From the IMG/VR virus record IMGVR_UViG_3300028275_000006, positions 62,001 to 126,000 of that record: 64,000 nucleotides of DNA; one strand, written 5' to 3'. Position 1 is the stretch's first letter. The number at the start of each line of letters is the position of its first letter. The notes below the pieces were generated by a model. It ran no database searches. It was not told the DNA's origin and worked only from the letters and a program-made list of their open reading frames with translations. The position numbers and the translations under genes are program-made. Positions 1 through 47,809 of the stretch are shown piece by piece.

Positions 1-1177
1 CTAAGTTCTTATTACCATGTTTGCTTTTTAATTCGTAACCGCCTTTAACTTTAACAATATGTTCGTTAAACTGTTCTGGATTCATTTTACCCCAGTAACG
101 TAGCAATACTCCAGCAAGAGCATTGGCTTCGTTTTCGTCTGGACTGCCAGTTGCACCATCTAATTCTCTTGCTTCGTTTTGTTTGCGATGCACTAATTCG
201 TGTGCTAGTGTTCGCATAATATCCATTTGATGTCTATCTTTAACAGATACAACTATGTCTTGTGTTTCAGGATCAAAGTATCCAAGTGCAGTAGTCTTTG
301 TATCACCTACTAATTTAATACGTGGTGCTTGTTCTATTTCTAAAAGTTTGATAGCCCATAATGCAAAGTCTTTGATACGTTGCTTTTTATCTGGAGTCCA
401 TGCTTCCATCAATCCGCCGCCGTCACCGCCGTCTCCCGCAGGCACACTACCTACACCACTGTAGCCTGCATCGGTACCATATAGTCCGTAAGGACCTGGT
501 CCATATAACGCACCGTATTTGTTTCTGCGTTTTTTCTTACGACCTTCGTCTACATCTTTGTCACCACTAGTGGCAATTAATTTTCCTTGACTTCTATCTA
601 GACTTTTTAACTGCTGTGGTTCGTGTTCTTCTTCACCTTGTCCCACACGTTTAGCACGTTTAAGTCCATCTAATATTACTTGTAAACTATCTTCGTCTGC
701 TTGATATTTGATACCAATACCGCCAGCGGCTTCCCAAGCACTGATATTACTACCTCTGTCGTCAATTAATACGTTAGGCATTCCGCTAGGATTTCTAGCG
801 TACTTGGCTTTGTTTGAAACAATGTAAATGTTGTCTGGCAGTTGATTTAAGTGTTCATCGATCCAAATACGTTTGTATTTTTCACTGCCTTCGTGGTCGC
901 CGCGTAATGGGCTAGAACAAATATTGTAGCCACCGGCCACATCAACTACAATATCAATTAGTTTGTCTGCTGTAGGAAACTTTGGTAGACGTGCAAAAAA
1001 GTCTGTTCCTACCATTTTGTTTAATGTAGGATCAGTCTTCGCTGGTGGAATGTCTCTGTAGTTTCCGCTTTTAATGCCAGCAAGTTTAGCATACTCTGTG
1101 AAAAAGTCTGCAAGAACTCCGTCCATGTCTACATAGACTTCCATGCCTTGGGGTAATTCTAAATCGCTTGCTCTCAT
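1..1177 (-). CDS. Multidomain protein, 3'-truncated by the window edge: HAD 5'(3')-deoxyribonucleotidase (NT5C-like) + HExxH zinc-peptidase-like domain + further module
   Basis: Not in the ORF track; translated by hand from ATG 1177 (ATGA overlap with the upstream stop). MRASDLE...VYVDMDGVLADFF (HAD motif I)...LIDDRGSN (motif IV)...MRTLAHELVHRKQ...ENEANALAG...QFNEHIVKVKGGYELKSKHGNKNL; no stop met up to position 1. Confidence 0.8.
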   Translation of the reverse strand, partial: MRASDLELPQGMEVYVDMDGVLADFFTEYAKLAGIKSGNYRDIPPAKTDPTLNKMVGTDFFARLPKFPTADKLIDIVVDVAGGYNICSSPLRGDHEGSEKYKRIWIDEHLNQLPDNIYIVSNKAKYARNPSGMPNVLIDDRGSNISAWEAAGGIGIKYQADEDSLQVILDGLKRAKRVGQGEEEHEPQQLKSLDRSQGKLIATSGDKDVDEGRKKKRRNKYGALYGPGPYGLYGTDAGYSGVGSVPAGDGGDGGGLMEAWTPDKKQRIKDFALWAIKLLEIEQAPRIKLVGDTKTTALGYFDPETQDIVVSVKDRHQMDIMRTLAHELVHRKQNEARELDGATGSPDENEANALAGVLLRYWGKMNPEQFNEHIVKVKGGYELKSKHGNKNL

Positions 1178-1461
1178 TTTTTATTTACCGGTTTTTCGCC
1201 TGTCATGTAAGGTAAACTAAACCATAACTGAAACCACTCAGGTGTTCCAGGTTTAATGTTTTGTTCTCTCTGTATTCTGCCTTTATCACTGCCAGTAACA
1301 CTGATGTTACTGCCCTGATACTCGTGTAGTCTTGCGGCATGACCTAAGCCTGCAAGATACTGCATAGATTTAATTTCGTATATAGGATCAGAAGGATCAA
1401 GTAAGCAGTCGTCTGGACTGTCTTGATTTAAATTTTCTGTACTGATTCTATATTGTTTCAT
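1174..1461 (-). CDS. hypothetical protein
   Basis: 95-aa ORF tightly coupled to both neighbours. Confidence 0.65.
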   Translation of the reverse strand: MKQYRISTENLNQDSPDDCLLDPSDPIYEIKSMQYLAGLGHAARLHEYQGSNISVTGSDKGRIQREQNIKPGTPEWFQLWFSLPYMTGEKPVNKK

Positions 1462-1464
1462 TTA

Positions 1465-2436
1465 TTATGAAACCTTAACAACAGTAAATCCTGCTTTTAC
1501 GTAGTGATCGTGAGCATAATTCTTTGCGTGTTCGCGACCTTTAGTAGTAGTTACACGGGGTGTTCTTTCAACTTCATTTCCGTCCTTGTCAATAAGAGTA
1601 AAACGGAATGAATACTCTTCTGGATCCGGTCCATTAACATATTCATCATCTTCGCGTTCACGACGTCCAAAGCCTGTGCGACTAGAATCGTAATCGCGTT
1701 GATACGCATCGTAACTACCGTAACGGCCTTCTTCTAATTCTGACATTTTCATAGCATCTTTTTCCTTCTTAGGTTCTTTTTCTTTTTTAGGCTCTTCTTT
1801 TTTCTTAGGTTCTTCTTTTTTCTTAGAATCTTTTTTCTTTGCTTTTTCCTTCGCCTTTTCTTCATAGGGCATCAAGTACTCGGCAACTAAGTCAAAGAAT
1901 GGTTTACCCATAACAGGTGTTTCTGAACTTACGCCAGCGGCATCGCTAAATGCTTGTCTGTCGCCTTTGGCTACTGCTTCACGTAAACTTGTAGCAGAGC
2001 TCTTACGTAATTCTAATTTTGCTTCTTCTATACTGTCGTGGAACAGTCTAATTTCTGGAAAATTGTATTCGCCGTGCGGACCAGACTTTCCATTATAATC
2101 TTGTACAGTAGGAACTACCCATGCTTCGTCAGTAACGATGATTAATTTTACTGCACCGTGTTTCTGATATACATAACTGGCTAATGTTAACCAACTTGTT
2201 TCGGCAACAATATGTCCTGTAACATCAGGCCAAATAACTTTCATACATTCTGTTTTTACATTGTATGGCAGTGGGTCTTTTGGTCCTACAGTACTTTCAT
2301 TAGTACCAACGTACCATACATCTTTAGTAGCGGCAGTTTCCCAAGCGGCTTTATGTCCTTTGTGCGGAGGATTGAATCGACCAAATATAATGGCTACTTC
2401 ACTTGTTTTATTTTCAAATAAATTTCTTAATCTCAT
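1465..2436 (-). CDS. HIGH-superfamily (cytidylyltransferase-like) nucleotidyltransferase with Lys/Glu-rich linker and C-terminal extra module
   Basis: IIFGRFNPPHKGH (HxGH) and SSATSLRE (KMSKS-equivalent) motifs. Confidence 0.8.
   Translation of the reverse strand: MRLRNLFENKTSEVAIIFGRFNPPHKGHKAAWETAATKDVWYVGTNESTVGPKDPLPYNVKTECMKVIWPDVTGHIVAETSWLTLASYVYQKHGAVKLIIVTDEAWVVPTVQDYNGKSGPHGEYNFPEIRLFHDSIEEAKLELRKSSATSLREAVAKGDRQAFSDAAGVSSETPVMGKPFFDLVAEYLMPYEEKAKEKAKKKDSKKKEEPKKKEEPKKEKEPKKEKDAMKMSELEEGRYGSYDAYQRDYDSSRTGFGRREREDDEYVNGPDPEEYSFRFTLIDKDGNEVERTPRVTTTKGREHAKNYAHDHYVKAGFTVVKVS
1760..1862 (-). repeat. low-complexity Lys/Glu/Pro coding repeat (KKKEEPKKKEEPKKEKEPKKEK)
   Basis: Repeated EEPKK/EPKK units in translation. 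Confidence 0.8.
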
Positions 2437-2437
2437 A

Positions 2438-3586
2438 TTATTCCCCAGGAGTCCACTGGTCTCTGTTTACTAACTTTACATTACCGAATTTCTTTTCAGG
2501 GCCAGCATAGCGTACACGACCTTCTCCGTTTGTGTCCCAGATATCTCCTTGCTCGCCTTCAACCTGTGCAAGTATTTGGTTTTTCATTGATTGTATTTGT
2601 TTAACTAGAGAAAATATAGCATCTACAGCGTTAGGATGGGCTTCTATTTTAGCCTGTATTTTTTCTTGTTTTCCTGCACTAACTTTTGACTTTTCCAACC
2701 ATGCGTTAAAATTCTGTAAACCTAAACTGCTTAACTGTTTAGCTCTTGCTGTTTGATTTACATAGGTGTAGAATATATTCTTAAGGTCACTTAACCCAGC
2801 AGTATCGGACAAGAATCCTTCGATTTGTTCTGCGTGTTGTTGTGCATAACCTTCAATGTTATCAATCATCTTAGTATCGATACTAACAGATTTTTTATTG
2901 TATATCGGACCTTGTACAATTAATTTAGGATTAGCATTAAATTGATCAAAATCGTCTAACGGTTCTTGTTCACTGTCATCCATTCCAAATTGTGGGAAAT
3001 AAGCATGACCGACAACCATTACATCTGCATAAGCAATACGCTTACCTAAATCACTGTCGCCTCTGACATGATAACAAGTTTGTGATTTAGGATTTGGACA
3101 GAATGTGTATACTCCGTCTTTTAAATCGGGCCTGTTTAAAAATAATGCGTCAGCATAGACAAAGCCTACAAAATCTTTTGGAGTTGCCGCATCAAATGCT
3201 GGATATAAATTTGCAAACTTGGCGGCAAATTCTTCACGTTGTTTACGCTCTTCTTCTGTCTTAGGTGTACCGCTCTTGTTAGCAATAAAATCTTTTACTG
3301 CTTCTGGATTATCTGTCTTAGCACCACGTGCCCAACCGTTGTGTCCTGCTAGAATTAATGGTCCATTCTTTGTTTCACGACCCCAATAGATTTGAGGATT
3401 ACCGTCCCATTTCATGCGAATGCTTTCAGAACCTTCTTGTGTAGCGATTTCTTTAACGTGGTCTAATGCTTCGATGGTACCGTCGATGCCGTAGAAGAAA
3501 ACTAGATCTTCGAGATGGTTGAATGCACGGCCCAGTTTCTTTTTAACTGTTTCTGTGGATTCAACAAATAGTTCTCTTAATCTCAT
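2438..3586 (-). CDS. DUF6267-like protein, putative ligase-type (KxDG) nucleotidyltransferase
   Basis: NHLEDL, MKWDGNPQIYWG (motif I-like), late GEGRV and VKLVNR resembling ligase motifs IV/V; adjacent to cytidylyltransferase-like gene as in T4-like phages. Confidence 0.6.
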   Translation of the reverse strand: MRLRELFVESTETVKKKLGRAFNHLEDLVFFYGIDGTIEALDHVKEIATQEGSESIRMKWDGNPQIYWGRETKNGPLILAGHNGWARGAKTDNPEAVKDFIANKSGTPKTEEERKQREEFAAKFANLYPAFDAATPKDFVGFVYADALFLNRPDLKDGVYTFCPNPKSQTCYHVRGDSDLGKRIAYADVMVVGHAYFPQFGMDDSEQEPLDDFDQFNANPKLIVQGPIYNKKSVSIDTKMIDNIEGYAQQHAEQIEGFLSDTAGLSDLKNIFYTYVNQTARAKQLSSLGLQNFNAWLEKSKVSAGKQEKIQAKIEAHPNAVDAIFSLVKQIQSMKNQILAQVEGEQGDIWDTNGEGRVRYAGPEKKFGNVKLVNRDQWTPGE

Positions 3587-4437
3587 TCTTCGCCCCTTGA
3601 CTGCTTGGGACCTTTACGTTGTTTCCATTTTTTATCTGTACTGCACCAGTAACGTCCATAAGTACCTTCTACTACGCCTTGCATCCATGAGAACCATTCG
3701 GCAGAACCTTCTTTAACATCTTCAGGCTTTTTGCCTTCGTTGCCAGGCCAGTTCTCATCGGCTAGTGCGTGTTGAATTTTTGGATTTTGTTCTTTACCTG
3801 GTAGTGCGGCAATAATTCTTTCTACATTACCTAAGTCAGCGGCAGTAGCATGAGCACCGATTAAAATTTTAGCAACTTCGTCTGCATTGTGAGAAACAAA
3901 GTCTGCCTTCTTTCCATTTTCATCTCGGGCAAACAGCCCTTGGAATCCGCTCCACATTAGTCCGTAAGGATATCTTTGGTTACGAGTTTCTTTAGCAATA
4001 CTGGAAAGTAGTATGTGCTTATGTAAACCTTTGAATGGAGTATTTTCAATGCTATAATCGTGTTGATGAAATTTACTAACAGAGCCAGCATCTTTAACAA
4101 ACATAATATCTGCTTGTGCAAACTTATCGCCGTTAGGAACTTTAATGTGTACATTGATGCCAGTTAGTGCAGATTCGGTGCCTCTATCTTGAAAGTATGT
4201 TTTTAATTTTTGTCTTGCTTCTTTGGCTGTCTTAACTTTAAAAAAGTCTAACATGGACTGCTCGTCGACCATTAAGTCCATGTCTCCAGAACTGGCTTTA
4301 TGGCCGGCACTGCCAACAGGAATTAAATCAATGCCCTGCGGCATCATTGATTGCGCCTTGGCTAGTACTTCCTTGGCTTCATCCTTGCCAAATGGTTCTA
4401 CATCAGGAAATACATTTCCACCTTCTAATAGGATCAT
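3583..4437 (-). CDS. Pol-beta superfamily nucleotidyltransferase
   Basis: VGSAGHKASSGDMDLMVD (GS...DxD) and third Asp in QADIMF. Confidence 0.7.
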   Translation of the reverse strand: MILLEGGNVFPDVEPFGKDEAKEVLAKAQSMMPQGIDLIPVGSAGHKASSGDMDLMVDEQSMLDFFKVKTAKEARQKLKTYFQDRGTESALTGINVHIKVPNGDKFAQADIMFVKDAGSVSKFHQHDYSIENTPFKGLHKHILLSSIAKETRNQRYPYGLMWSGFQGLFARDENGKKADFVSHNADEVAKILIGAHATAADLGNVERIIAALPGKEQNPKIQHALADENWPGNEGKKPEDVKEGSAEWFSWMQGVVEGTYGRYWCSTDKKWKQRKGPKQSRGEE

Positions 4438-4778
4438 TCATCTCTCCCATCATAAACACCGTTTTCGATGTTATGTTTTTCTTCGTGGAACATTTTAACA
4501 GCCAAGTCCTGTACTTCTTCGGGATCGAATAATACTTTTGGGTTTTGGGTGATTTTGAATTTATTGCAATAAACTGGTATGGCTTTATCGATGCAGGGCA
4601 TAAATGACATTTCGTTGCACTTGCCGCCGGATTTCAACTTGCCTTTTAATTCAGCGATTACAGGATAAACTACCTTACGATAAAAACGTGGGTCGTTGTG
4701 CATAAAAAACTTTAAATCATCGACGAAATCGACGTCTTTAAACTGTTCTGCTTGCTTATCTACATCATTTATTTTCAT
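4434..4778 (-). CDS. hypothetical protein (start probably ATG 4778, MKINDVD; GTG 4823 alternative)
   Basis: ORF directly downstream of the late-promoter box; ATGA overlap with next gene. Confidence 0.6.
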   Translation of the reverse strand: MKINDVDKQAEQFKDVDFVDDLKFFMHNDPRFYRKVVYPVIAELKGKLKSGGKCNEMSFMPCIDKAIPVYCNKFKITQNPKVLFDPEEVQDLAVKMFHEEKHNIENGVYDGRDE

Positions 4779-4831
4779 ATAATCACCATGTTCTGCATAG
4801 AGCCGCGGATATACATACTCCACTAATAGAG

Positions 4832-4838
4832 TATTTAT
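4832..4838 (-). promoter_or_regulatory. T4-late-like promoter (ATAAATA) heading the 4778->1 cluster
   Basis: cATAAATAc in the short intergenic gap; the motif recurs before structural genes. Confidence 0.6.
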
Positions 4839-4855
4839 GCTATTTTACAACTGTA

Positions 4856-5500
4856 TTAAATTTCGCTGATTAGGTACATTTCGTCCACTCTGCGTATCTT
4901 ATTGCCCAGGAATAGTCTGCACATTCCTAGGGTCTTTTCATTTGCGGCGTAAAAGTAGCCTTCGGAGTGGTATGTACGCTTTAGCAGTTTAATGCTGGGA
5001 ATCTGCTCTGCCCATGCGTGGAAACTTTCGCTAGAATCACGTAGAGGATTTACAGTTACTCTATACTTGTGCGTATACTTTTTAGATATAATACAGTTAG
5101 GGTTAGTTAATAGAAACTTCCTAACTTTATCGTCTGCAGGTTTAGTTACTTCTTTAACATGTCCTAATAGTTGAACAGCATCTAATAAAGAATCACTGTT
5201 GGTGTAAATGCTTAATGTGTCGCTTTCTACACGCAACAAAAAATCAGTTTCTTTATTAAGTAAATCTACAAGTTTGTTTATGTAGATTACATCACTGACT
5301 GTAGCATATTTCTTACGCCAGGATCTAAGTTGTACTCTACCATCCGGGACGGCTTCAATTTGATCACTAAGAATCTTGATTGAAGCCATTGCCCGAGCGA
5401 TAGTTCTGCTACGAAACTCCGAAGCAAAAACATTTATTACACTAATCTTGTTGACATATTTGTCAAAAAACAATTTAGATGTTTGCTTGTACAGTTTCAT
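4856..5500 (-). CDS. hypothetical protein (start probably ATG 5500)
   Basis: Overlaps the clpA 3' end; last gene of the dnaJ-def-clpA run. Confidence 0.6.
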   Translation of the reverse strand: MKLYKQTSKLFFDKYVNKISVINVFASEFRSRTIARAMASIKILSDQIEAVPDGRVQLRSWRKKYATVSDVIYINKLVDLLNKETDFLLRVESDTLSIYTNSDSLLDAVQLLGHVKEVTKPADDKVRKFLLTNPNCIISKKYTHKYRVTVNPLRDSSESFHAWAEQIPSIKLLKRTYHSEGYFYAANEKTLGMCRLFLGNKIRRVDEMYLISEI

Positions 5501-7715
5501 TCTGTAATTCGAGTTTAATTTCATCGTCTTCAACATTGATGTTTACTGCTCCACCCTGTTTCAGACCACCAAACAACATAAGTTTGGATAATGGACGCTT
5601 AATATCCTTATCGATTACACGTTGCAATGGGCGAGCACCCATCTTCTTATCAAAGCCCTTATCTACCAAGTAGTCAATTGCTTCGTTGCTGATTGTAATC
5701 TTAATGCCCTTATCCTTGACCTGTGTTTTTAACTCAACTAAGAACTTGCCAACAATTTTAATCATTGTTTCTTTGCTTAGTTTACCAAATGTAACAACAC
5801 CATCTAAACGATTGCGGAACTCTGGAGCGAAGAATTTCTTAAGTTCTTTATCTTCGTAGTCATTATCTTGACTACCAAAACCAATAACGTTCTTTTCAGC
5901 ATCTTGTGCGCCAAGGTTAGTAGTCATAATCAAAATAATGTTACGAGCATCTGCTACTTTACCATTAGATCCTGTTACAAAACCATTGTCCATAATCTGT
6001 AATAGGATAGTTGCTACATCTGGATGTGACTTTTCAATTTCGTCTAACAATAGAACACAATGTGGATTCTCTTGTAGTTTAGTAATCAACAAGCCAGCGT
6101 TTTCTTCAAAGCCAACATATCCAGGAGGGCTACCAATCAACTTAGATACGCTGTGTTTTTCTTGATACTCCGACATGTCAAAGCGAATAAGTGGAACACC
6201 TAACTGTTTACTAAGTTGTTTTGCGGCTTCAGTCTTACCAACACCAGTTGGCCCCATGAATACAAAACTACCCACTGGTTTATTATCAGATTTAAGTCCT
6301 GCTTGTGCTACAAGAATCTTATCAACGATTTCGTCAATGGCTTCATCTTGCCCATAAACTTCACCTTTAAGGTTCTTTTCAAGGTTAACAAGATTTTCGT
6401 TTTCTTTTTCCTTGACTGTGTCTTCGGGAAGTTTAACCATTTTTGCTAATTCGTATTGAATCTCAGGAACATCGACAATCTTATGTTCTGCGTTCTTAAT
6501 ATTGAAACGACTACAAGCCACATCAATTAGATCAATTGCTTTATCTGGTAATTTCTTATCTGTCATATATTTTACAGATAATTTAACTGCTGTTTCAATA
6601 GCCGCATCTGTAATTTCAGCACCGTGATGTTTTTCGTAATACTTCTTAATACCTTTAAGAATATCTACTGCTACTTCTGGAGTAGGCTCGTCAACAGTGA
6701 TGCGTTGGAAACGGCGCATTAACGCACGATCCTTTTCAAAGTACTTACGATATTCTTCCCAAGTAGTAGATGCAACTACTTTAATGTTGCCTTTGCTTAG
6801 AGCAGGCTTCATCATATTAGCCAAGTCATTGGCATTACCTTGTCCACCTGCGCCTGCGCCACTAATCATGTGTGCTTCATCGATGAACAATACAGTTTTG
6901 CCTTTGCCTGTTAGTGCCTTAAGTACTAATTTAAAACGTTCTTCAAAGTCACCGCGATATTTACTACCAGCAAGCATAGCACTAATGTCTAAGTTATAGA
7001 CTGTATATTCTTTTAAGAAGTCAGGAACAGCACCATTAATAATATTATGTGCTAGGCCTTCTGCGATAGCAGTCTTACCTACACCAGGGTCGCCTACTAA
7101 CAATACATTATTTTTAGTTCTGCGACCGAGCCCTAGCGCAATTTGTTCTAGTTCTTCAGTTCTACCGATAACTGGATCGATTTTATTTTTCTTGACTTGG
7201 TCATTGAGGTTAGTAGTAAATGCTTTCAGTGCTTTTTCACTTTGTGCATCTGTGACCTGTTCTTCTTCGTCTTCATCGATTTCGCTGTTAATAAAATCAG
7301 CAAACTTTTCACGATCCACGCCGCCCTTATTAATATAGAATACAGCGTAACTGCGCTTTTCGCTAAGTGCGCTCATAAACACATCTACAAGCTCAATGCT
7401 TTGACGTCCGCTGAAAAGGACTTGTGTGAATGCACGATTAAGAACACGCTCAACAGTTTGAGTCTTCTTAGGTTTAAATCCTTTGGGAATTGGATCTATT
7501 TTAATTTCGTCTAATTGATTTTTAAGATAGTGTTCGAGATTCTTTTTAATGTAATCCCCGTCACCACCGAAGTTTACAAGAAGTTCGTAGAACTTTTCTT
7601 CGCAGAGCATAGCAAAAATAAGATGCTCTAGCGTGACATATTCGTGTCCTAATTTTTTACAGTCTGCAACAGCCTTTTCAAAAACTACTTGCAGTTGATC
7701 ACTTGGTTCTACCAT
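5475..7715 (-). CDS. clpA: ATP-dependent Clp protease ATP-binding subunit ClpA
   Basis: Clp N-domain (HEYVTLEHL); two AAA+ modules (GDPGVGKT/FIDEAH; GPTGVGKT/LLDEIEK); GSKYRGDFEER pore loop; IGF ClpP-docking loop (VIGFG); GARPL; no ClpB middle domain. Confidence 0.93.
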   Translation of the reverse strand: MVEPSDQLQVVFEKAVADCKKLGHEYVTLEHLIFAMLCEEKFYELLVNFGGDGDYIKKNLEHYLKNQLDEIKIDPIPKGFKPKKTQTVERVLNRAFTQVLFSGRQSIELVDVFMSALSEKRSYAVFYINKGGVDREKFADFINSEIDEDEEEQVTDAQSEKALKAFTTNLNDQVKKNKIDPVIGRTEELEQIALGLGRRTKNNVLLVGDPGVGKTAIAEGLAHNIINGAVPDFLKEYTVYNLDISAMLAGSKYRGDFEERFKLVLKALTGKGKTVLFIDEAHMISGAGAGGQGNANDLANMMKPALSKGNIKVVASTTWEEYRKYFEKDRALMRRFQRITVDEPTPEVAVDILKGIKKYYEKHHGAEITDAAIETAVKLSVKYMTDKKLPDKAIDLIDVACSRFNIKNAEHKIVDVPEIQYELAKMVKLPEDTVKEKENENLVNLEKNLKGEVYGQDEAIDEIVDKILVAQAGLKSDNKPVGSFVFMGPTGVGKTEAAKQLSKQLGVPLIRFDMSEYQEKHSVSKLIGSPPGYVGFEENAGLLITKLQENPHCVLLLDEIEKSHPDVATILLQIMDNGFVTGSNGKVADARNIILIMTTNLGAQDAEKNVIGFGSQDNDYEDKELKKFFAPEFRNRLDGVVTFGKLSKETMIKIVGKFLVELKTQVKDKGIKITISNEAIDYLVDKGFDKKMGARPLQRVIDKDIKRPLSKLMLFGGLKQGGAVNINVEDDEIKLELQNETVQANI

Positions 7716-8226
7716 TTAATTTCCTCTGTTTTTTCAGTGCTAAATCTAACTTTAACTTACTTACTCTTTTGGTAAAAGTAATGCCGTCTAAGTGGTCAAT
7801 TTCATGTTGAATACACTTGGCGTCATAACCACTTAATGTAATTGTACATTCTTTTGCTGTCTTGTCAAGATATTTTATTGTAATATTATTAAATCTGTTA
7901 ATCTTTATGAACAAATTTGGAAAACTCAAACAGCCTTCCTCGTCTATACACTCGTCGGATCCGCTGACAATTTCGGGATTAAACATGGCAAATGGTTCTT
8001 GCCCACTAGGTTTGACTACAACAACTCTGCGATCAAATCCAACTTGATTAGCGGCAATGCCGATGCCACGGCCGCCTAGCATTATCTCGACCATGGCTTG
8101 TTCTATTTGGTTAGGATCGATGCCGCAATTAAAATCAAAGGGCTCTAATTTTGTATAGAGTATTGGGTCTGGATCTGTTCTAAGATAAAAATCTTTAGGT
8201 TCTGTAACGGTCTGAAAGTTGCTCAA
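7699..8226 (-). CDS. def: peptide deformylase (start uncertain; TTG 8226 proposed)
   Basis: All three PDF motifs: [24 protein letters not shown]. Confidence 0.92.
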
Positions 8227-9019
8227 TTTGAATCTTATCTTCCGTGAATAGTATTTTGGGAATTGTAATTTGTACTTGTATAAACAAATTTCCTCTTTGA
8301 TGATTGTGTGGACCGACTGGAAGTCCGTAACTATCACACTTAATCATTTGACTAGGTTGTATGCCTGCCGGAACTTTGATTTCTAATTCTTTGTCTTCTA
8401 ATGTTTTAAAGCGGATTGTTTTTCCTAACATAGCATCAAACGCAGAAATTTCTACTTCTGCATATAAGTTCCTGCCATCACGTTTGAATCTTGGATGTGG
8501 AAGTTCAATAATTTGTGCTATTACATCGCCCCTAGGCATATTAGGAATGCTGTCGTCTCCTAATCCTCTAAAACGAATTGAGTCACCGTTTTGTACACCT
8601 GCAGGAATACTTAATTGTAGTGCCTGTTCTTTTCCACTAGGTAATCTGATACTGCCAGTAACTTCTTTGCCGACAAGTATTTCTTCTAAAGTCATTTCGA
8701 CACGGATATTGATATTCCTGTTCTTTCTGGACTGCTGTCTAAAGCCAGCACCAAAGGGATTAGCACCAAACATGGCACCAAACAAATCATTCATGTCGTT
8801 CATATTGCCAGTATGAAAACTATACTGTGGCATTGGGTTGTCGTATTGAGCTCGTTTTTGGTCATCACTAAGGGTGCGATATGCTTCTTCAATTTGTTGA
8901 AATTTAGAAGTATCGCCGCCTCTGTCAGGATGGTGCTTTGAAGCCAATTTACGATATGCTTTTTTGATATCGTCTTGGCTAGCAGATTTTGAAACTCCTA
9001 GTATTGAATAATAATCCAT
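8195..9019 (-). CDS. dnaJ: DnaJ/CbpA-type (class II) co-chaperone
   Basis: J-domain DYYSILGV...HHPDRGG, G/F-rich linker, C-terminal DnaJ_C domain, no zinc finger. Confidence 0.9.
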
Positions 9020-11782: not shown

Positions 11783-12525
11783 TATAGTTTCTCCAAAATA
11801 ACTGCACGGCCTTTGTTTTCAAACATGAACTTGTTGCCCAGTTTGGTAATGTTGTAGTTGCCAATGTACTTGGTTAAAAACATAACTTCGGCCATGTCGT
11901 TGTATGAGACAGCAATCCTGTCTTCGACACTTTCTAATACTTCTCTTGTACCGCCGGAAACTAGATATTTGAACTTTAATGGCTCAGCGTACACCTTTTT
12001 AAATTCAATAATGTCGCCGTGCATACGAACACTTTCTAACATACTATTGTTGAAGAACTGTTCGTAACTATTTAGTTCCTGTTCCTGCATACGTTGTTTG
12101 TACAACATAGGATTAGTAGGAATAATTTCATCTAGTTTTTCTTGATTAGCCTCTAGGCTATCAAAACTCTTATGATATCTAAAAGCAAACTTGTCAATGC
12201 CTGCTAGTTTAGAAATACCATATAACATATCGCTGATTTGTTCTGTAACTTTACTTGTTCTTTGTAATTCTACAAACACACGATATTTTCCATCTTCTAA
12301 TTCACCGGGACTCATGTCAGCATCTAGAACAAAGTCGTAACCTTTTTCTACAAAACTAACTAAGTCTTCTGCCGGACTGCGACTTTCCACAGTAAAACTT
12401 AAAACAACGACATCTTCGTCGTCGCCCATTTTAGATTTATAATTGTCTACTTCGAATACACGATTTACTAGATTAACTAGATCGTTGGCTAGTAAACTTG
12501 TTTCATTAAGCGGCTGGTGGGGCAC
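11782..12525 (-). CDS. conserved hypothetical phage protein (GTG start at 12525)
   Basis: AGGAGG upstream of in-frame GTG 12525; the track's longer N-terminus is overlap with the upstream gene. Confidence 0.65.
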   Translation of the reverse strand: MPHQPLNETSLLANDLVNLVNRVFEVDNYKSKMGDDEDVVVLSFTVESRSPAEDLVSFVEKGYDFVLDADMSPGELEDGKYRVFVELQRTSKVTEQISDMLYGISKLAGIDKFAFRYHKSFDSLEANQEKLDEIIPTNPMLYKQRMQEQELNSYEQFFNNSMLESVRMHGDIIEFKKVYAEPLKFKYLVSGGTREVLESVEDRIAVSYNDMAEVMFLTKYIGNYNITKLGNKFMFENKGRAVILEKL

Positions 12526-13072
12526 TTGCTTCTCCTCCTGGTGCTGGAGCGGCTGCGGCCGCTGGTGGTGCGCCTGCTGTGGCTTCACCTGCTGGTGGAG
12601 GTGTAAGCTCTGGCGCCTTTTCATTATTTGCTGGCTCTAGTTCGTCCATTAATTGGTTATGATATCCACGGAAAATTTCTAACATTAACTTCTTAGGCAT
12701 CTGTACTTCTACAATCCAAATTGGATGCTCGTCTAGTTTACCAAGTTTTGTACCTGGACGAATGTCGTCAGGTTCTTTAATTTCTCTAGGCTTGACTAAT
12801 GTATCTTTTTTGTAAATTACTCGACAGCCGTATTCCATCAAACGCTTTGCGGCCTGCGGGTTAGGCATTTGTTTGTGAGGCCACATAAAACTAGCACTGA
12901 CCCAATGACGGTCAACGACAGGTCCTTTGATAAGTTCTCCATCGCGCCAGTTTTCAAATACATACATATCCAACTCGTCAAATACACGCTCGAAATCCTT
13001 AAGGATTGCAAGGCTACTATTGTTGTTATATATGGTGTTGATGTTTTCTATAATATCTAAAATATCGTGCAT
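12506..13072 (-). CDS. conserved hypothetical phage protein with Ala/Pro tail
   Basis: 188-aa ORF downstream of a late-promoter box. Confidence 0.7.
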   Translation of the reverse strand: MHDILDIIENINTIYNNNSSLAILKDFERVFDELDMYVFENWRDGELIKGPVVDRHWVSASFMWPHKQMPNPQAAKRLMEYGCRVIYKKDTLVKPREIKEPDDIRPGTKLGKLDEHPIWIVEVQMPKKLMLEIFRGYHNQLMDELEPANNEKAPELTPPPAGEATAGAPPAAAAAPAPGGEASAPPAA

Positions 13073-13095: not shown

Positions 13096-13102
13096 TATTT
13101 AT
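13096..13102 (-). promoter_or_regulatory. T4-late-like promoter (ATAAATA) for the run ending in the lysis cassette
   Basis: gATAAATAc, intergenic. Confidence 0.6.
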
Positions 13103-17591: not shown

Positions 17592-18172
17592 TATAGTGCT
17601 GTAAAGTTACCTAAGTATCTTCCAAATACGTTTACGCCACCATCGTAAGTCCAGAATTCAAAAATCTTTGGACTTGTCGAACTAGTAACGCTTTGTGTAC
17701 CGGGCCATCCTGATTCTACATAGAAGTCACCAATGGATTCTGTGTTAAAGGAAAAGAATTGTTCTGTACCATTTCCATATAAATGAACTCTAATAACAGC
17801 CAATGTTCCGCTTGCTGGTAAGTCAGAGAATGTAAGTTCTAAAGGACTTCCTGCGTCAGGATCTGTTGCAGCCAATGTGTACACATGATATGCTCCGCTG
17901 GTAAAACTTACGTTTTGACTAGCAACAATGTTGCCACCTGCATTAAATTCGAAACTGGCACCTTTTAGGTTTGCATTAGCAATGGTGTTTCCGCTAAGAT
18001 CTGTTTCTGGACTAGAAATGTCTAGTCTAGATGCTTGTAAATCTTGAATGTCAGACTTGGCCTGAATTAGCGTATCTTTAATTGCTGAGAAGTTATCACG
18101 GAAGCCTTGGCTTTCGTTGTCTACGCCCGCTACTGGGAACGCTTCATCTATTTGGGTCTCGCGGTATGTCAT
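17591..18172 (-). CDS. putative virion structural protein
   Basis: FPVAGVDNESQGFRDNF N-terminus, beta-rich; late box upstream. Confidence 0.6.
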   Translation of the reverse strand: MTYRETQIDEAFPVAGVDNESQGFRDNFSAIKDTLIQAKSDIQDLQASRLDISSPETDLSGNTIANANLKGASFEFNAGGNIVASQNVSFTSGAYHVYTLAATDPDAGSPLELTFSDLPASGTLAVIRVHLYGNGTEQFFSFNTESIGDFYVESGWPGTQSVTSSTSPKIFEFWTYDGGVNVFGRYLGNFTAL

Positions 18173-18195: not shown

Positions 18196-18202
18196 TATTT
18201 AT
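18196..18202 (-). promoter_or_regulatory. T4-late-like promoter
   Basis: gATAAATAt. Confidence 0.55.
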
Positions 18203-21200: not shown

Positions 21201-21324
21201 TAACTGAAAATGTTACTCCGGTTAAGTCTGCGCTTGGAATTATAGGCAGAGGTATAGTCTGGGTCTGTCGTTCGTTGTAAGTATTAAAACTGTATCCAGA
21301 CGGTTGATTCCATATATTAAGCAT
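18202..21324 (-). CDS. putative baseplate/structural protein with repeated Ig-like (He_PIG-type) domains
   Basis: Repeated LPSGL/LPPGL/LPDGL/LPEGL Ig-like motifs; structural context. Confidence 0.65.
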   Translation of the reverse strand: MLNIWNQPSGYSFNTYNERQTQTIPLPIIPSADLTGVTFSVIAGNLPSGLRVAYDTNLSTWVIKGSPLEVSTNTTSTFVIRASNGTEISDRTFTMTIAGPDAPVWITPGPNPDIQIYDFDPEATYIPDTVIRHTVSNESTLYRTTTTVSGVTPPNSTYYQVFTEDTGLLPVGPVTTRVSAVVSAKRQSNLVTITTASAHNFVFGNIVTIATNVAAFNAANVEVLQPLPLDGEQYEEYLTRISTTITFNKLGGDLGSQTVSGTVTLIKDPLTFVLDNTPVDFQLEATDTDLSSTDTLEYFIGDGDGELPPGLSMSSTGRITGIIDPILALDVTARTGFYDTNLYDAYAYDFGKRPNIGEEDYLNVVTPRKLNRNYEFIVTVSDGESVARRRFRIYVVGDDFLRTDNTLLQVGNGAYTADSTYLRAPIWLSAANLGLRRANNYVTILLDVFDPNPEVGPVRYELAALNDDLTPSVLPDGLYIDSDTAEVFGFAPYQPAITKEFKFTVNAIKYDKENLTEVEVAIVVADDAPIGQTFLKILPLPEEDVGLLIGDVIRIGPSIYTMTEYISNTVLGGTMATLKLSDALLTNVTDGLIIRKTYNQSVSEFSTQIAPKTFTIAILGEVDSVIQFTTDRILGSIKPSFPSNFYVEATTTVPNAKLRYTLVDGRLPEGLTLKSSGIIEGKINQFRANSISGFTLFDGGDTTFDGDLLTVDRSYRFVVNAQDQFRYSSVSKEFIITISEGTLTLYSNIYTKPLPKQSKRELFYNFINDTTVFTPEKIYRLGDPNYGLQTELKMLIYAGIESKAMPEYIAAISKNIRRKRYRIGNLKKAIAKVQGTNDIVYEVIYLEILDDYEIANKSAASRIKLDRGVNSPTKINQARRNPVDGSLGTVDGNGTVTYGSTYINGKLNEQAFDRFSPMSTPVTIDTANVMVSGNDTEYVYPSSIKNVRANISEVGLTENEFLPLWMTTPQDARTAATGFVKAVPLCYCKPGEGQYILDNIINRNFDFNQLDFEIDRFIIDSDINDVQEKYLKFSDARYNI

Positions 21325-21343: not shown

Positions 21344-21350
21344 TATTTAT
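21344..21350 (-). promoter_or_regulatory. T4-late-like promoter
   Basis: gATAAATAc within a CCGATA/TATCGG inverted repeat. Confidence 0.55.
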
Positions 21351-32485: not shown

Positions 32486-32515
32486 TGAATACTCCAAAAA
32501 AGACTTTGTATCCAA

Positions 32516-32555: not shown

Positions 32556-32843
32556 ATGTTCATACGTATAGATACAGAAAAAAGTCAGCATACACGAACT
32601 AGTAAACTTGGTCGTGAGCATACTTATGAACGTAAAAAAACTATTGTAGTCCTGCGCTGTGATAACTGCGGTGAAACATTTACTAGGACTAAAGGATCAA
32701 TGGATCCTAATAGGTTAAACAATAATTTCTTTCACTGTTGCCCTAGTTGCGATCCTAAGAGATTTGCACAGAAAAAAGGTGCAGAACGCAAAATCATATG
32801 GGATAAGACTGTTTCGAGCCTGGATGATATTAGTAAACTATAA
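32556..32843 (+). CDS. small zinc-binding protein
   Basis: CDNC and CCPSC motifs. Confidence 0.65.
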   Translation: MFIRIDTEKSQHTRTSKLGREHTYERKKTIVVLRCDNCGETFTRTKGSMDPNRLNNNFFHCCPSCDPKRFAQKKGAERKIIWDKTVSSLDDISKL

Positions 32844-32846
32844 ATA
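32839..32846 (+). promoter_or_regulatory. T4 late promoter, exact consensus TATAAATA
   Basis: Exact octamer upstream of GGAGG RBS and ATG 32869. Confidence 0.65.
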
Positions 32847-34124: not shown

Positions 34125-34153
34125 ATTATAGCATCGTTACTGCCAGTTGTCAA
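34125..34153 (-). promoter_or_regulatory. sigma70-type promoter for uvsE
   Basis: TTGACA-17-TATAAT. Confidence 0.8.
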
Positions 34154-34832
34154 CAATGATTTGGTCCTGGACATCTTCGGGATTTGGTGTTCCGTGGAAC
34201 GCAATTACGCTACAATCCGGGTTCATAGACGGGCTACGCACCGTCTTAAACACGTTTTTACCCTGAACCCTAATCAACTCTTCCCGCTGTCTTATTTCCC
34301 ACTTGTAGCTCTGTATCCAAGTTTCAGGGAAAAATTTTATAATACTTTTGTGTGACTGCCAAATCCAATCTTGATCACCTGGGAACTTTTTGGTTAACGC
34401 TGGATTGTTTTCCAAATCGTCCCAAATATTGCTGAAATGGTTACTGGGCCAACGCAGTACAGCACTACCTAATTTTGGTGGCACACGTCTAAACACTCTG
34501 CCTACATCTTCCAAACCAACAAAATTTCCAGGCAGGTACGAAACCAATTTGTCTATATTACCTACAATAACCATATCCAAATCAAAGAACAAATTTACAT
34601 CACCGTCTGGAAAATGTCCTTGTTTAAAGATATATGGTTTCCACCACCAACCAGAAAACAGTCCTTTGGGCAAGGGTTTAATTTTAATTGCAGGATTTAA
34701 GTTTGTAGGATCTTCAGTAAAGCAATAAAAATCAAAAGGCACAGTTAAGTGCCTTGAGACCATATTGTAAAGTTTGTTTACATATTCCGGACCGTACTTT
34801 GTACCGTGTTTTAAACTAATGACGTTTAGCAT
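34137..34832 (-). CDS. GT-A fold glycosyltransferase-like protein
   Basis: KHGTKYGPEYV, CFTED, WWWKPYIF, FFDLD (DxD), GDQDWI, FHGTPNP. Confidence 0.7.
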   Translation of the reverse strand: MLNVISLKHGTKYGPEYVNKLYNMVSRHLTVPFDFYCFTEDPTNLNPAIKIKPLPKGLFSGWWWKPYIFKQGHFPDGDVNLFFDLDMVIVGNIDKLVSYLPGNFVGLEDVGRVFRRVPPKLGSAVLRWPSNHFSNIWDDLENNPALTKKFPGDQDWIWQSHKSIIKFFPETWIQSYKWEIRQREELIRVQGKNVFKTVRSPSMNPDCSVIAFHGTPNPEDVQDQIIVDNWQ

Positions 34833-37823: not shown

Positions 37824-37854
37824 TATTTATATAGAATCCAACATAGCATAAATA
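37824..37854. promoter_or_regulatory. back-to-back late promoters
   Basis: TATAAATA on minus (37824-37831) and ATAAATA on plus (37848-37854) in a 63-bp divergent gap. Confidence 0.65.
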
Positions 37855-47803: not shown

Positions 47804-47809
47804 ACTAGT

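What the first reader, a model, noticed from the sequence alone, without database searches (positions are those of the whole stretch)
1..4838. Putative virion-packaged cassette of three unrelated nucleotidyltransferase folds plus a HAD nucleotidase
Seen: behind one late box (4832-4838) lie coupled genes for a Pol-beta NTase (GS...DMD), a KxDG ligase-like protein, a HIGH-family NTase and a HAD nucleotidase/peptidase fusion. Three different NTase folds side by side under late control are not explained by replication. Their N-termini (MILLE, MRLRELFVE, MRLRNLFE, MRASDLE) resemble T4 internal-protein capsid-targeting leaders (MKTYQEFIAE-type), which the prohead protease removes by cutting after Glu. 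Inference: these enzymes are packaged in the head and injected, acting at once on RNA/tRNA ends, NAD or nucleotide pools, or host immune signals.
Basis: partly seen in the sequence, partly recalled or inferred. Interest (0 to 1): 0.8.

Follow-up and report, generated by a model that had tools for sequence, protein, structure and literature searches.

The report
Late operon of capsid-targeted repair-like enzymes
A large uncultured T4-like river phage has a late operon for a DNA-polymerase-X-like enzyme, a ligase-like enzyme and an NAD-synthesis-like enzyme, two of which carry the short N-terminal tag that phage T4 uses to load proteins into its head, so they are probably delivered into the host with the DNA.

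Summary
Six tightly coupled minus-strand genes (A to F, window 1-4778) follow a CATAAATA box at 4831-4838.

- **Promoter.** All seven ATAAATA sites in the 64 kb lie just upstream of a gene start, including tail-fibre-like and virion-structural genes. They fit the NATAAATA late promoter of T4-like cyanophages.
- **B** is a minimal family-X-polymerase-like nucleotidyltransferase (predicted fold).
- **C** is DUF6267. It has an invariant KxDG lysine and only weak resemblance to RNA/DNA ligases.
- **D** is a HxGH nucleotidyltransferase closest to NadM-type NMN adenylyltransferases.
- **F** is an NT5C-type HAD domain fused to an HExxH peptidase-like domain.
- **One module.** B, C and D occur as natural B-C, C-B, C-D and B-C-D fusions in many relatives.
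- **Leader.** C and D, but not convincingly B or F, start with M-R-x-x-E/N-Φ-Φ-(x)-E. This matches the T4 capsid-targeting sequence in its key positions and is shared by dozens of unrelated, often basic, neighbouring proteins in relatives.
- **Published support.** D homologues with this leader were detected in purified virions of cyanophages S-SZBM1 and S-CREM2. In S-CREM2 the leader is enriched among virion proteins.

Packaging of C and D is therefore plausible but unproven for this phage. The substrates are inferred.

The parts
4831..4838 (-). NATAAATA-type late-promoter-like box (CATAAATA), 53 nt upstream of the ATG of gene A
   Evidence: ATAAATA is depleted in the window (7 sites against 22 expected), and all 7 sites lie just upstream of an SD plus start codon, including structural genes. 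The box is conserved in diverged relatives. NATAAATA is the late promoter reported for S-PM2 and other cyanophages (PMC2984593).
4434..4778 (-). Gene A, 114 aa, unknown function, first gene of the operon, no leader
   Evidence: ORF. An SD GGTGA lies 4 nt before the ATG. No hit in any family library. Conserved upstream of B/C in relatives.
3583..4437 (-). Gene B, 284 aa, minimal family-X-polymerase-like nucleotidyltransferase (palm plus thumb). G42-S43, D52, D54 and D110 are invariant.
   Evidence: Alignment A1. AlphaFold model, pLDDT 81. Foldseek against PDB puts Pol lambda, beta, mu and ASFV PolX on top, E 1e-5 to 1e-3, TM 0.41-0.55. Atlas structural neighbours carry DNA_pol_B_palm/thumb. No Pfam, PHROG or PDB sequence hit.
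2438..3586 (-). Gene C, 382 aa, DUF6267. Candidate lysine-nucleotidyltransferase (ligase-like): K59-W-D-G, D146, Y172, E355-G356 and K371 are conserved.
   Evidence: Pfam DUF6267, E 3e-16. Invariant residues. Model pLDDT 94. Only weak ligase resemblance: Lig4/Lig3 at E 0.15-1.3, phage RNA ligase at E 0.014, RNA_ligase clusters by language-model features at 0.70-0.76, and hhalign aligns only KWDG to KLDG.
3560..3586 (-). Leader of C: MRLRELFVE, modelled as disordered, followed by a linker of variable length
   Evidence: Pattern M-R-x-x-E-Φ-Φ-x-E in orthologues, followed by a gap-rich linker. pLDDT 52 for residues 1-10. The C core begins at residue 16-22 in fusions and in shorter homologues.
1465..2436 (-). 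Gene D, 323 aa. N-terminal HxGH nucleotidyltransferase (residues about 14-190) closest to NadM-type NMN adenylyltransferase, then a Lys/Glu-rich linker and a variable C-terminal part.
   Evidence: PHROG 'cytidyltransferase', E 4e-16. Profile A4 against PDB: NMNAT MJ0541 at 1.2e-7 and NadM-Nudix at 4e-7. Invariant G19, P23, G27, H28, S147 and R152. Only residues 1-191 are conserved in relatives.
2413..2436 (-). Leader of D: MRLRNLFE. Its first 12 nt are identical to those of C.
   Evidence: aligned with MRFRQFIIEA of S-SZBM1_140, MKNFSSFLTEA of S-CREM2 gp154 and MKKFSEIIEA of Melnitz.
1174..1461 (-). Gene E, 95 aa, unknown function
   Evidence: ORF. Conserved downstream of D in many relatives. 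No family hit.
1..1177 (-). Gene F, first 392 codons of a 581-aa protein. NT5C-type HAD domain (window 683-1144; DMDGV), basic/Gly-rich linker, HExxH metallopeptidase-like domain (window 104-352; HELVH at 188-202).
   Evidence: Pfam NT5C 26.7 bits, above the cut-off of 24.8; DUF6782 and Peptidase_M78 below their cut-offs. PHROG deoxyribonucleotidase at 4e-20 and metallo-protease at 1e-3. Full length in L003. In relatives the peptidase-like part is a separate gene with its own leader.
13096..13102 (-). Other late box, upstream of a 'virion structural protein' gene (12509-13072)
18196..18202 (-). Other late box, upstream of ORF 17594-18172
21344..21350 (-). Other late box, upstream of the 1040-aa ORF 18205-21324
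32840..32846 (+). Other late box (TATAAATA), upstream of a small plus-strand ORF
37824..37854 (.). Pair of divergent late boxes (37824-37830 on the minus strand, 37848-37854 on the plus strand) between two tail-fibre-like genes

Best explanation
Window 1-4838 is the start of a late operon in a large uncultured T4-like phage, driven by a NATAAATA box. It opens an array of genes whose products carry a T4-type capsid-targeting leader, M-[RK]-x-x-[EQN]-Φ-Φ-(x)-E.

**Packaging.** C and D carry this leader. They are most likely loaded into the prohead core, trimmed after the Glu by the prohead protease, kept in the head and ejected with the DNA.

**The module.** B, C and D are one functional unit.
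- B, a minimal family-X-polymerase-like enzyme, extends or fills 3' ends.
- C, a DUF6267 protein with a KxDG lysine, seals the break by a ligase-type mechanism.
- D, a NadM-like adenylyltransferase, supplies the nucleotide cofactor. The most likely reaction is NAD+ made from NMN and ATP.
- B has no convincing leader of its own. It may ride in with C, to which it is fused in many relatives.

Together they would repair or join broken nucleic acid at the moment of infection, before any phage gene is expressed.

**Shown:** operon structure, promoter motif and its positions, the leader and its spread, natural fusions, intact catalytic motifs, fold assignments for B and D, and published virion detection of D homologues.

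**Inferred:** packaging in this phage, cleavage after Glu, ligase chemistry of C, the substrate of D, and whether the target is DNA or RNA.
For: **Operon and promoter**
- Gene coupling.
- Promoter positions and partner genes.
- Promoter conservation.
- NATAAATA also precedes the homologous genes in S-CREM2 (TATAAATA) and S-SZBM1 (AATAAATA). It is the published cyanophage late promoter (PMC2984593).

**Leader**
- 143 of 918 unique coding-strand ORFs in 80 related loci carry it, against 0 of 254 on the opposite strand (p = 6e-17).
- They fall into about 20 or more unrelated families, many of them Lys/Arg-rich.
- The next two genes of the same phage carry it too: MRLIDIINE and MKLFQMIQD.
- The T4 capsid-targeting sequence is MKTYQEFIAE (PMC8442874). 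Targeting depends on residues 4 and 7, processing on residues 8 and 10, and gp21 cuts after L/I-x-E (PMC9026906). The leader here has the same spacing.

**Virion data**
- S-SZBM1_140 (leader MRFRQFIIEA; D homologue at E 1e-13) was detected in CsCl-purified virions (PMC9146016).
- S-CREM2 gp154 (leader MKNFSSFLTEA; D homologue at 3e-11) was detected in virions (PMC10665884).
- In S-CREM2, 5 of 5 leader-bearing CDS are among the 52 virion proteins out of 219 CDS (p = 6.5e-4). A pattern fixed beforehand gave 6 of 7 (p = 8e-4).

**Module**
- B-C, C-B, C-D, B-C-D and D-B-C fusions.
- The C-D pair is adjacent in S-CAM4 and S-SZBM1 and one small ORF apart in Melnitz. It is fused in S-PM2.

**Folds**
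- B.
- D.
- C motifs.
Against: - There are no virion or expression data for this phage.
- A gp21-type prohead protease was not found in the 64 kb. The rest of the 270-kb contig could not be read.
- The only protease-like gene in the window is ClpP-like.
- The N-terminus of B is part of its conserved core, and F does not fit the leader pattern.
- The authors of the S-CREM2 study themselves caution that abundant enzymes may co-purify with virions.
- D of S-CAM4 and the C proteins of S-CAM4 and S-SZBM1 lack the leader.
- C has no significant similarity to any solved ligase.
- No terminator separates gene G from the box, so earlier read-through transcription is possible.
- RNA-library contigs bridge the box in 2 of 4 runs.
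- The regular expressions for the S-CREM2 test were partly refined after seeing the data.
Confidence: 0.5

Rival explanations
1. The enzymes are ordinary intracellular late enzymes and are not packaged. The shared N-terminus would serve another purpose, such as efficient translation initiation, docking to a common partner like the sliding clamp, or simply being a recombination scar. The virion detections of homologues would be carry-over of abundant proteins.
For: The S-CREM2 authors raise co-purification as a possibility. Peptide counts for the D homologues are low: 2 and 3 peptides. C and D share 12 identical nucleotides at their 5' ends. DNA repair enzymes often bind clamps through short terminal peptides (general knowledge). 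B lacks a separate leader.
Against: The leader varies in sequence but keeps the pattern of the T4 capsid-targeting sequence across about 20 unrelated families. In S-CREM2 every protein carrying it is in the virion proteome, including low-abundance hypothetical proteins. The leader is followed by a variable disordered linker, as expected for a propeptide. The genes lie behind late promoters together with structural genes.
Confidence: 0.2
2. The main purpose is NAD+ supply as a counter-defence. D would be a virion-delivered NMN adenylyltransferase that restores NAD+ when host systems such as Thoeris, DSR or SIR2-type effectors deplete it. B and C would be accessory or act on unrelated targets.
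For: The best solved relatives of D are NMNATs, with an intact HxGH and SxTxxR. The cyanophage literature calls this protein an NMNAT homologue that may enter the host. Phage NAD+ reconstitution pathways are known (Osterman et al. 2024, cited in PMC12801897).
Against: An NMNAT alone needs NMN, and no Nampt or NadV was seen among the window ORFs that were scanned. The recurrent physical fusion of D to C and B argues that D serves the ligase-like and polymerase-like enzymes rather than the general NAD+ pool. The match to NMNAT covers mainly the first 60 residues. There are no PADLOC hits.
Confidence: 0.15
3. The module repairs RNA or tRNA. B would add nucleotides to RNA 3' ends, like a CCA-adding enzyme or a terminal uridylyltransferase. 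C would be an RNA ligase that reseals tRNAs or mRNAs cut by host anticodon nucleases or other ribonuclease defences.
For: The nearest named neighbours of C by language-model features and by weak fold hits are RNA ligases. Terminal uridylyltransferases, CutA and OAS are secondary fold hits for B. Trypanosome RNA editing is a precedent for a Pol-beta-type nucleotidyltransferase working with an Rnl2-type ligase (general knowledge).
Against: B matches family X DNA polymerases clearly better than RNA nucleotidyltransferases: TM 0.41-0.55 and rmsd about 5 Å, against TM 0.23-0.31 and rmsd 8-12 Å. Its structural neighbours carry DNA_pol_B_thumb. The phage already has a T4 Rnl1/gp63-like ligase next to a polynucleotide-kinase-like P-loop protein at 61.5-63.1 kb. 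No kinase or 2',3'-phosphoesterase domain is found in the fusions.
Confidence: 0.15

Closest known systems
T4 internal proteins IPI/II/III and Alt (capsid-targeting-sequence-bearing, gp21-processed, ejected head proteins)
   Same: A short N-terminal leader with hydrophobic residues at the targeting positions and Φ-x-E at the cleavage position. Late expression. A variable array of unrelated, often basic, cargo proteins sharing only the leader. Alt is an enzymatic cargo.
   Different: The leader is one residue shorter (MRLRELFVE against MKTYQEFIAE). The cargo includes a conserved three-enzyme nucleotidyltransferase module. Cleavage and packaging are not shown here, and no gp21 gene was seen in the window.
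'Cytidyl(yl)transferase' of T4-like cyanophages (Kyanoviridae), for example S-SZBM1_140 and S-CREM2 gp154
   Same: They are homologues of D (E 1e-13 and 3e-11), carry the same kind of leader, lie behind a NATAAATA box, and usually have a DUF6267 gene next door. They were detected in purified virions.
   Different: Identity is only 21-27% (A4). In the literature they are annotated as glycerol-3-phosphate cytidylyltransferase or as auxiliary metabolic genes. Neither the leader nor the link to DUF6267 and the PolX-like protein appears in the papers read. The PolX-like B protein was not detectable in those isolates.
African swine fever virus Pol X (minimal family X polymerase) with its DNA ligase
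   Same: A minimal palm-plus-thumb polymerase without the 8-kDa and fingers domains, working with a ligase in short-gap repair. ASFV PolX is among the fold matches of B (TM 0.55 by target).
   Different: There is no detectable sequence similarity. The ligase partner here is DUF6267, not a canonical ATP-dependent DNA ligase, and a third, NMNAT-like enzyme is part of the unit. Virion packaging of the ASFV repair enzymes is recalled from memory only.
NadM-type NMN adenylyltransferases (MJ0541; Francisella and Synechocystis NadM-Nudix)
   Same: GRF(Q/N)P(F/P)HKGH and S-x-T-x-x-R motifs. Profile E-values of 1e-7 to 4e-6.
   Different: The similarity is concentrated in the first 60 residues or so. 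D has an N-terminal leader, a Lys/Glu-rich linker and a variable C-terminal domain, and is fused to DUF6267 in relatives. The substrate is untested.
Bacterial LigD and mammalian PNKP-Pol beta-Lig3 (heal, fill and seal machines)
   Same: A polymerase and a ligase combined in one polypeptide or complex. A HAD-family phosphatase (F) is encoded in the same operon.
   Different: The polymerase of LigD is of the primase (AEP) type, not family X. F is an NT5C-type nucleotidase, not a demonstrated 3'-phosphatase. No Ku or kinase component was seen.

Membership tests
T4-type capsid-targeted internal head proteins | N-terminal leader of about 10 aa with hydrophobic residues at the targeting positions and L/I-x-E at its end | tested here: met
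   C has MRLRELFVE and D has MRLRNLFE. Orthologues keep M-[RK]-x-x-E-Φ-Φ-x-E. The T4 rules are in PMC9026906. The feature is not met for B (conserved core) or for F (MRASDLE).
T4-type capsid-targeted internal head proteins | Same leader on several unrelated cargo proteins of one phage | tested here: met
   C, D and the next two genes of the same contig carry it. About 20 or more families carry it in relatives.
T4-type capsid-targeted internal head proteins | Late expression | tested here: inconclusive
   The NATAAATA box is shared with structural genes and is conserved. RNA-library contigs break at the box in 2 of 4 runs but bridge it in the other 2, and they give no timing.
T4-type capsid-targeted internal head proteins | Protein present inside purified virions | not testable with these tools
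   Only homologues have data: S-SZBM1_140 and S-CREM2 gp154 by LC-MS. The leader is enriched among S-CREM2 virion proteins.
T4-type capsid-targeted internal head proteins | Leader removed by a gp21-type prohead protease encoded by the phage | not testable with these tools
   No gp21 homologue was seen among the window ORFs that were scanned, only a ClpP-like protein. The rest of the contig is not held. A scan with S-CREM2 gp21 returned only other contigs.
Family X DNA polymerase (B) | Pol-beta palm with G-S and three catalytic carboxylates | tested here: met
   G42, S43, D52, D54 and D110 are invariant in 22 homologues.
Family X DNA polymerase (B) | Palm-plus-thumb fold like solved PolX enzymes | tested here: met
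   Foldseek puts Pol lambda, beta, mu and ASFV PolX first, E 1e-5 to 1e-3, TM 0.41-0.55. Atlas neighbours carry DNA_pol_B_thumb/palm, TM 0.49-0.68. These are comparisons of predicted models only.
Family X DNA polymerase (B) | Match to the family's sequence profiles | tested here: not met
   No Pfam, NCBIfam or PHROG hit. Neither the single sequence nor the profile finds PolX in the PDB.
Family X DNA polymerase (B) | Template-directed DNA synthesis | not testable with these tools
   Needs an enzyme assay.
Covalent nucleotidyltransferases: DNA/RNA ligases and capping enzymes (C) | Motif I KxDG with an invariant lysine | tested here: met
   K59, D61 and G62 are invariant in 42 sequences with a mean column identity of 33%.
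Covalent nucleotidyltransferases: DNA/RNA ligases and capping enzymes (C) | Motifs III, IIIa, IV and V in order | tested here: inconclusive
   Candidates are D146, Y172, E355-G356 and K371-x-x-x-R375. Motifs IV and V would follow a 100-residue helical insert.
Covalent nucleotidyltransferases: DNA/RNA ligases and capping enzymes (C) | Significant sequence or fold similarity to known ligases | tested here: not met
   PDB Foldseek best E is 0.15, with Lig4/Lig3 at probability 0.15-0.21. BFVD RNA ligase at E 0.014. hhalign against the phage's own DNA ligase gives probability 0.2%. Profile against PDB finds nothing. RNA_ligase clusters appear only as leads at 0.70-0.76.
HxGH nucleotidyltransferases / NadM-type NMNAT (D) | (H/T)xGH motif and SxTxxR motif | tested here: met
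   G19, P23, G27, H28, S147 and R152 are invariant.
HxGH nucleotidyltransferases / NadM-type NMNAT (D) | Profile similarity to solved members | tested here: met
   1f9a NMNAT at 1.2e-7, 2qjt at 4e-7, PPAT at 1e-6. Pfam CTP_transf_like is below its cut-off for this protein (16.1 against 21) but above it in fused homologues (32.6).
HxGH nucleotidyltransferases / NadM-type NMNAT (D) | NMN (or NaMN) as substrate | not testable with these tools
   Needs an enzyme assay.
HAD NT5C 5'(3')-deoxyribonucleotidase (F, N-terminal domain) | Pfam NT5C above the gathering score, with a DxDxV motif | tested here: met
   26.7 bits against a cut-off of 24.8. DMDGV is present. PHROG 2643 at 4e-20.
ImmA/IrrE-like (M78) or DUF6782 metallopeptidase (F, second domain) | HExxH plus a profile match above the cut-off | tested here: inconclusive
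   HELVH is present. DUF6782 scores 18.9 against a cut-off of 27, and Peptidase_M78 scores 15.4 against 22.

The most novel reading that the evidence does not exclude
A T4-capsid-targeting-like leader marks a large, so far unrecognised repertoire of capsid-delivered proteins across aquatic T4-like phages, both Kyanoviridae and uncultured jumbo relatives. Its conserved core cargo would be a self-contained fill-and-seal nucleic-acid repair machine: a PolX-like polymerase, a new ligase family (DUF6267), and an NMNAT-like enzyme that regenerates the ligase's NAD+ cofactor. It would mend or join the injected genome before any phage gene is expressed.
Probability: 0.3. Interest if true: 0.85.

Novelty: new variant of a known kind. 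Interest (0 to 1): 0.68.

Why it matters
- The 'cytidyltransferase' of T4-like cyanophages is widespread (matches in 340 phage records, mostly cyanophages). It has been treated as an unexplained metabolic gene, and its repeated appearance in virion proteomes was left open.
- Linking it to a T4-type capsid-targeting leader, to DUF6267 and to a PolX-like enzyme through gene order and natural fusions turns three unknowns into one testable hypothesis.
- The leader also gives a simple sequence rule for predicting which proteins of aquatic T4-like phages are injected with the DNA. In S-CREM2 these include a SAM hydrolase, a kinase and several small basic proteins. That bears on early host takeover and counter-defence in abundant environmental phages.
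- If C proves to be a ligase, DUF6267 would be a new, strongly diverged branch of the ligase superfamily.

Tried and rejected
- **DNA search.** A near-identity search against isolated phages found nothing. A protein-level search with B found nothing.
- **Sequence against PDB.** Single-sequence and profile searches for B and C gave only chance hits.
- **C against the phage's own DNA ligase.** hhalign aligned only motif I, with no significance.
- **T4 consensus box.** The full TATAAATA occurs only twice, below chance. The informative unit is ATAAATA/NATAAATA.
- **Sigma-70 and terminator scans** of 1-9000 gave nothing above the shuffled expectation.
- **PADLOC.** No defence-system relatives.
- **B homologues in cyanophage isolates.** The genes upstream of the cyanophage and Melnitz C-D pairs (S-SZBM1_142, S-CAM4 gp099, Melnitz_15) and S-CREM2 gp156 were tested for B homology with hhalign. 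None was significant. gp156 is a different Pol-beta-type nucleotidyltransferase.
- **Looking for a gp21 protease on the window's own contig.** A scan with S-CREM2 gp21 returned only cyanophage-like contigs.
- **Other domains in the fusions.** No kinase, HAD or HExxH motifs were found.
- **Clustering.** Single-linkage clustering of the leader-bearing proteins merged families through low-complexity Lys-rich segments. It was redone with coverage and SEG filters.
- **Literature.** Searches for DUF6267 and 'cytitidyltransferase' found no paper. Only one paper, a T4 head-assembly review, holds both 'capsid targeting' and 'cyanophage'.
- **Tool failures.** Two protein-comparison runs failed internally and were replaced by hhalign in a script.

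Full report
**What is there**

All genes in window 1-7715 lie on the minus strand. Downstream of a ClpA-like ATPase (5478-7715) and an unknown gene G (4859-5536) there is a 77-nt spacer that holds CATAAATA (4831-4838). Six genes follow, with junctions of -4, -4, +1, +3 and -4 nt.

| Gene | Window | Length | N-terminus |
|---|---|---|---|
| A | 4434-4778 | 114 aa | MKINDVDKQ |
| B | 3583-4437 | 284 aa | MILLE |
| C | 2438-3586 | 382 aa | MRLRELFVE |
| D | 1465-2436 | 323 aa | MRLRNLFE |
| E | 1174-1461 | 95 aa | MKQYRISTE |
| F | 1-1177 | cut by the window edge | MRASDLE |

F is 581 aa in the identical contig held as L003. It omitted the two small genes A and E.

**Origin**

- No isolated phage is close at the DNA level.
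- The window is identical to IMG/VR contigs of 212-270 kb.
- It is present in riverine metatranscriptome libraries.
- 256 viral contigs encode a relative of C. The order ClpA-like, G, A, B, C, D, E is widely kept.
- The window also encodes T4-like functions: a gp44-like clamp loader, an ATP-dependent DNA ligase, a gp63/Rnl1-like RNA ligase next to a polynucleotide-kinase-like protein, tail-fibre-like proteins and an endolysin.

**The late box**

- The full T4 consensus TATAAATA occurs only twice.
- ATAAATA occurs 7 times against 22 expected. Every copy is followed, 10-25 nt downstream, by a Shine-Dalgarno-like sequence and a start codon. For gene A, the ATG that homologues support (4778) lies 53 nt downstream of the box.
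- The genes served include two tail-fibre-like genes, transcribed divergently, and a PHROG 'virion structural protein'.
- The extended box is kept upstream of gene A in relatives whose A protein is only 41-47% identical.
- NATAAATA is the late promoter described for S-PM2 and other T4-like cyanophages (PMC2984593).
- The homologous genes in cultured cyanophages sit behind the same box: TATAAATA before S-CREM2 gene 154 and AATAAATA before the S-SZBM1 operon 142-141-140.
- RNA-library contigs stop at 4807 and 4814 and resume at 4857 in two runs, but bridge the box in two others. They may contain DNA, so this is weak support only.

**The enzymes**

*B.*
- It has no family hit.
- In 22 homologues G42-S43, D52, D54 and D110 are invariant.
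- Its AlphaFold model (pLDDT 81) matches family X polymerases best: Pol lambda, beta, mu and ASFV PolX, at E 1e-5 to 1e-3, TM 0.41-0.55 and rmsd about 5 Å. RNA uridylyltransferases and OAS match clearly worse.
- Independent Atlas models place it beside clusters that carry DNA_pol_B_palm/thumb.

*C.*
- It is DUF6267, a virus-only family.
- Across 42 sequences with a mean column identity of 33%, H24, K59, D61, G62, G69, D146, Y172 and K335 are invariant, and E355-G356 and K371 nearly so.
- The model is confident (pLDDT 94) but has no significant match in the PDB.
- DNA ligases IV and III, phage RNA ligases and RNA_ligase clusters recur only as weak leads.
- Ligase chemistry is therefore a hypothesis that rests on KxDG.

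*D.*
- It is the 'cytidyltransferase' of PHROGs.
- A profile of diverse homologues finds archaeal and NadM-type NMN adenylyltransferases in the PDB, at 1.2e-7 and 4e-7. PPAT follows.
- The GxxxPxxxGH and SxTxxR motifs are invariant.

*F.*
- It combines an NT5C-type HAD domain, above the Pfam cut-off, with an HExxH peptidase-like domain, below cut-off.

**One module, not three strangers**

- Among the 150 best 50%-identity representatives of C, dozens are natural fusions: B-C, C-B, C-D, B-C-D and D-B-C. Atlas clusters show the same.
- The C-D pair is adjacent in S-CAM4 and S-SZBM1 and separated by one small ORF in Methylophilales phage Melnitz. It is fused in S-PM2.
- B was not detectable in those isolates.

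**The leader**

- *B is different.* Its MILLEGGN is invariant and also occurs internally in C-B fusions. It is part of the enzyme.
- *C and D have an extension.* It is 9-15 residues long, modelled as disordered, followed by a linker of variable length, and absent from many homologues. The pattern is M-[RK]-x-x-[EQN]-Φ-Φ-(x)-E.
- *It is widespread.* In the 80 related loci, 143 of 918 unique coding-strand ORFs carry it, against 0 of 254 on the other strand. They fall into about 20 or more unrelated families, many rich in Lys and Arg.
- *It continues in this phage.* The two genes after F in the same contig start MRLIDIINE and MKLFQMIQD.
- *It matches T4.* The T4 capsid-targeting sequence is MKTYQEFIAE (PMC8442874). 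Targeting depends on residues 4 and 7, processing on residues 8 and 10, and gp21 cuts after L/I-x-E (PMC9026906). The leader here has the same spacing and is one residue shorter.
- *Fusion junctions.* Domain junctions in the natural fusions also carry [IL]-x-E. Such a short motif is expected fairly often by chance.

**Experimental support from relatives**

- S-SZBM1_140 is a D homologue (E 1e-13) that starts MRFRQFIIEA. It was the one enzyme found in CsCl-purified virions (PMC9146016).
- S-CREM2 gp154 is a D homologue (3e-11) that starts MKNFSSFLTEA. It is in the virion proteome. The authors note 'frequent detection' of cytidyltransferases in cyanophage virions, and they also warn of possible co-purification (PMC10665884).
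- I rebuilt the 219 CDS of S-CREM2. All 5 proteins with M-x-x-[FL]-x-x-F-[LFM]-x-E are among the 52 virion proteins (p = 6.5e-4). They are the SAM hydrolase, gp13, the kinase, gp136 and gp154. A looser pattern fixed beforehand gave 6 of 7 (p = 8e-4).
- That paper does not mention an N-terminal signal.
- No paper in the library links capsid targeting to virion-associated enzymes of cyanophages; the only paper holding both terms is a T4 head-assembly review.

**Mechanism**

The best-supported reading has two layers.

1. *Delivery.* C and D, together with many neighbouring proteins, are T4-style internal head proteins. They would be made late, loaded through the leader, trimmed after Glu and ejected with the DNA. 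B may ride in with C. For F and A there is no evidence.
2. *Chemistry.* The PolX-like B extends or fills 3' ends. C seals through a lysyl-nucleotide intermediate. D supplies the adenylate donor, most simply NAD+ from NMN and ATP. That would explain why D is so often fused to C.

The target, DNA or RNA, is open. The PolX-like fold of B, and the separate kinase plus Rnl1 pair at 61.5-63.1 kb, favour DNA. Everything beyond folds, motifs, gene order and fusions is inference.

**Limits**

- There are no data on this phage's virions or on expression timing.
- No gp21-type protease was seen in the window.
- C is not demonstrably a ligase.
- The virion detections of homologues rest on few peptides.
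- Some motif definitions were refined after inspection.

Noticed in passing
L086/L085/L088 (S-CREM2, OR473000): gp6, gp13, gp14, gp136, gp154: The 'non-structural' virion proteins of cyanophage S-CREM2 share a T4-capsid-targeting-like N-terminus: SAM hydrolase MKDFDSFLEE, gp13 MKDLHSFLTE, kinase (V)KRFDAFLTE, gp136 MQTFSMFFSE and cytidylyltransferase MKNFSSFLTE. Several lie behind NATAAATA boxes. The source paper does not mention this.
   Followed up: yes
window 61475-61930 and 62160-63107 (minus strand): A P-loop polynucleotide-kinase-like protein lies next to a T4 Rnl1/gp63-like RNA ligase. With the ATP-dependent DNA ligase at 50425-51744 and DUF6267, the window holds three ligase-like genes.
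   Followed up: partly
window 5478-7715 and 44299-44919 (minus strand): The phage encodes a ClpA/ClpB-like ATPase (PHROG 4871, E 2e-250) and a ClpP-like protease (PHROG 94, 'head maturation protease'). Whether the latter is a ClpP partner or the prohead protease is open.
   Followed up: no
window 23207-32515 (minus strand): A 3102-aa ORF, not analysed. A 1040-aa ORF (18205-21324) behind a late box has no PHROG match.
   Followed up: no
window 2373/3565; RNA-library contigs of runs X2 and X4: A contig form joins 22 nt of the C-type leader DNA directly to the body of D at codon 22, and the sequence upstream of it is unlike B. It probably comes from a related phage with a different gene order. 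It hints that the near-identical leader DNA (12 identical nucleotides at the starts of C and D) could mediate shuffling, as in the T4 internal-protein loci.
   Followed up: partly
window 1468-1850 (C-terminal third of D): After its enzyme domain, D carries a Lys/Glu/Pro repeat (KKKEEPKKKEEPKKEKEPKKEKD) and a C-terminal part that differs between relatives, whose lengths range from 219 to 558 aa. B has a basic tail (GRYWCSTDKKWKQRKGPKQSR) that is kept in only some homologues.
   Followed up: no
L003 12836-14251 (same phage, beyond the window's left edge): A Lys-rich protein of about 440 aa contains DUF3008. Its likely true start is the internal MKLFQMIQD, the same start as its homologues in other loci. 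It is another candidate internal protein.
   Followed up: partly
window 7702-8337, 34140-35540, 43739-44299, 46955-47839: Further genes: a peptide deformylase, a glycosyltransferase, a QueD-like 6-pyruvoyl-tetrahydropterin synthase, a 2OG-Fe(II) oxygenase-like protein and a metallophosphoesterase. The QueD-like gene may point to 7-deazaguanine DNA modification.
   Followed up: no
Atlas clusters related to C: DUF6267 also occurs fused to a Cu/Zn superoxide dismutase domain in one viral cluster of 65 members.
   Followed up: no
L085 8013-8723 (S-CREM2 gp156): A second virion-detected protein, two genes downstream of the cytidylyltransferase, is a Pol-beta-type nucleotidyltransferase (NTP_transf_2, 21.4 bits against a cut-off of 21). 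It is not detectably related to B.
   Followed up: partly
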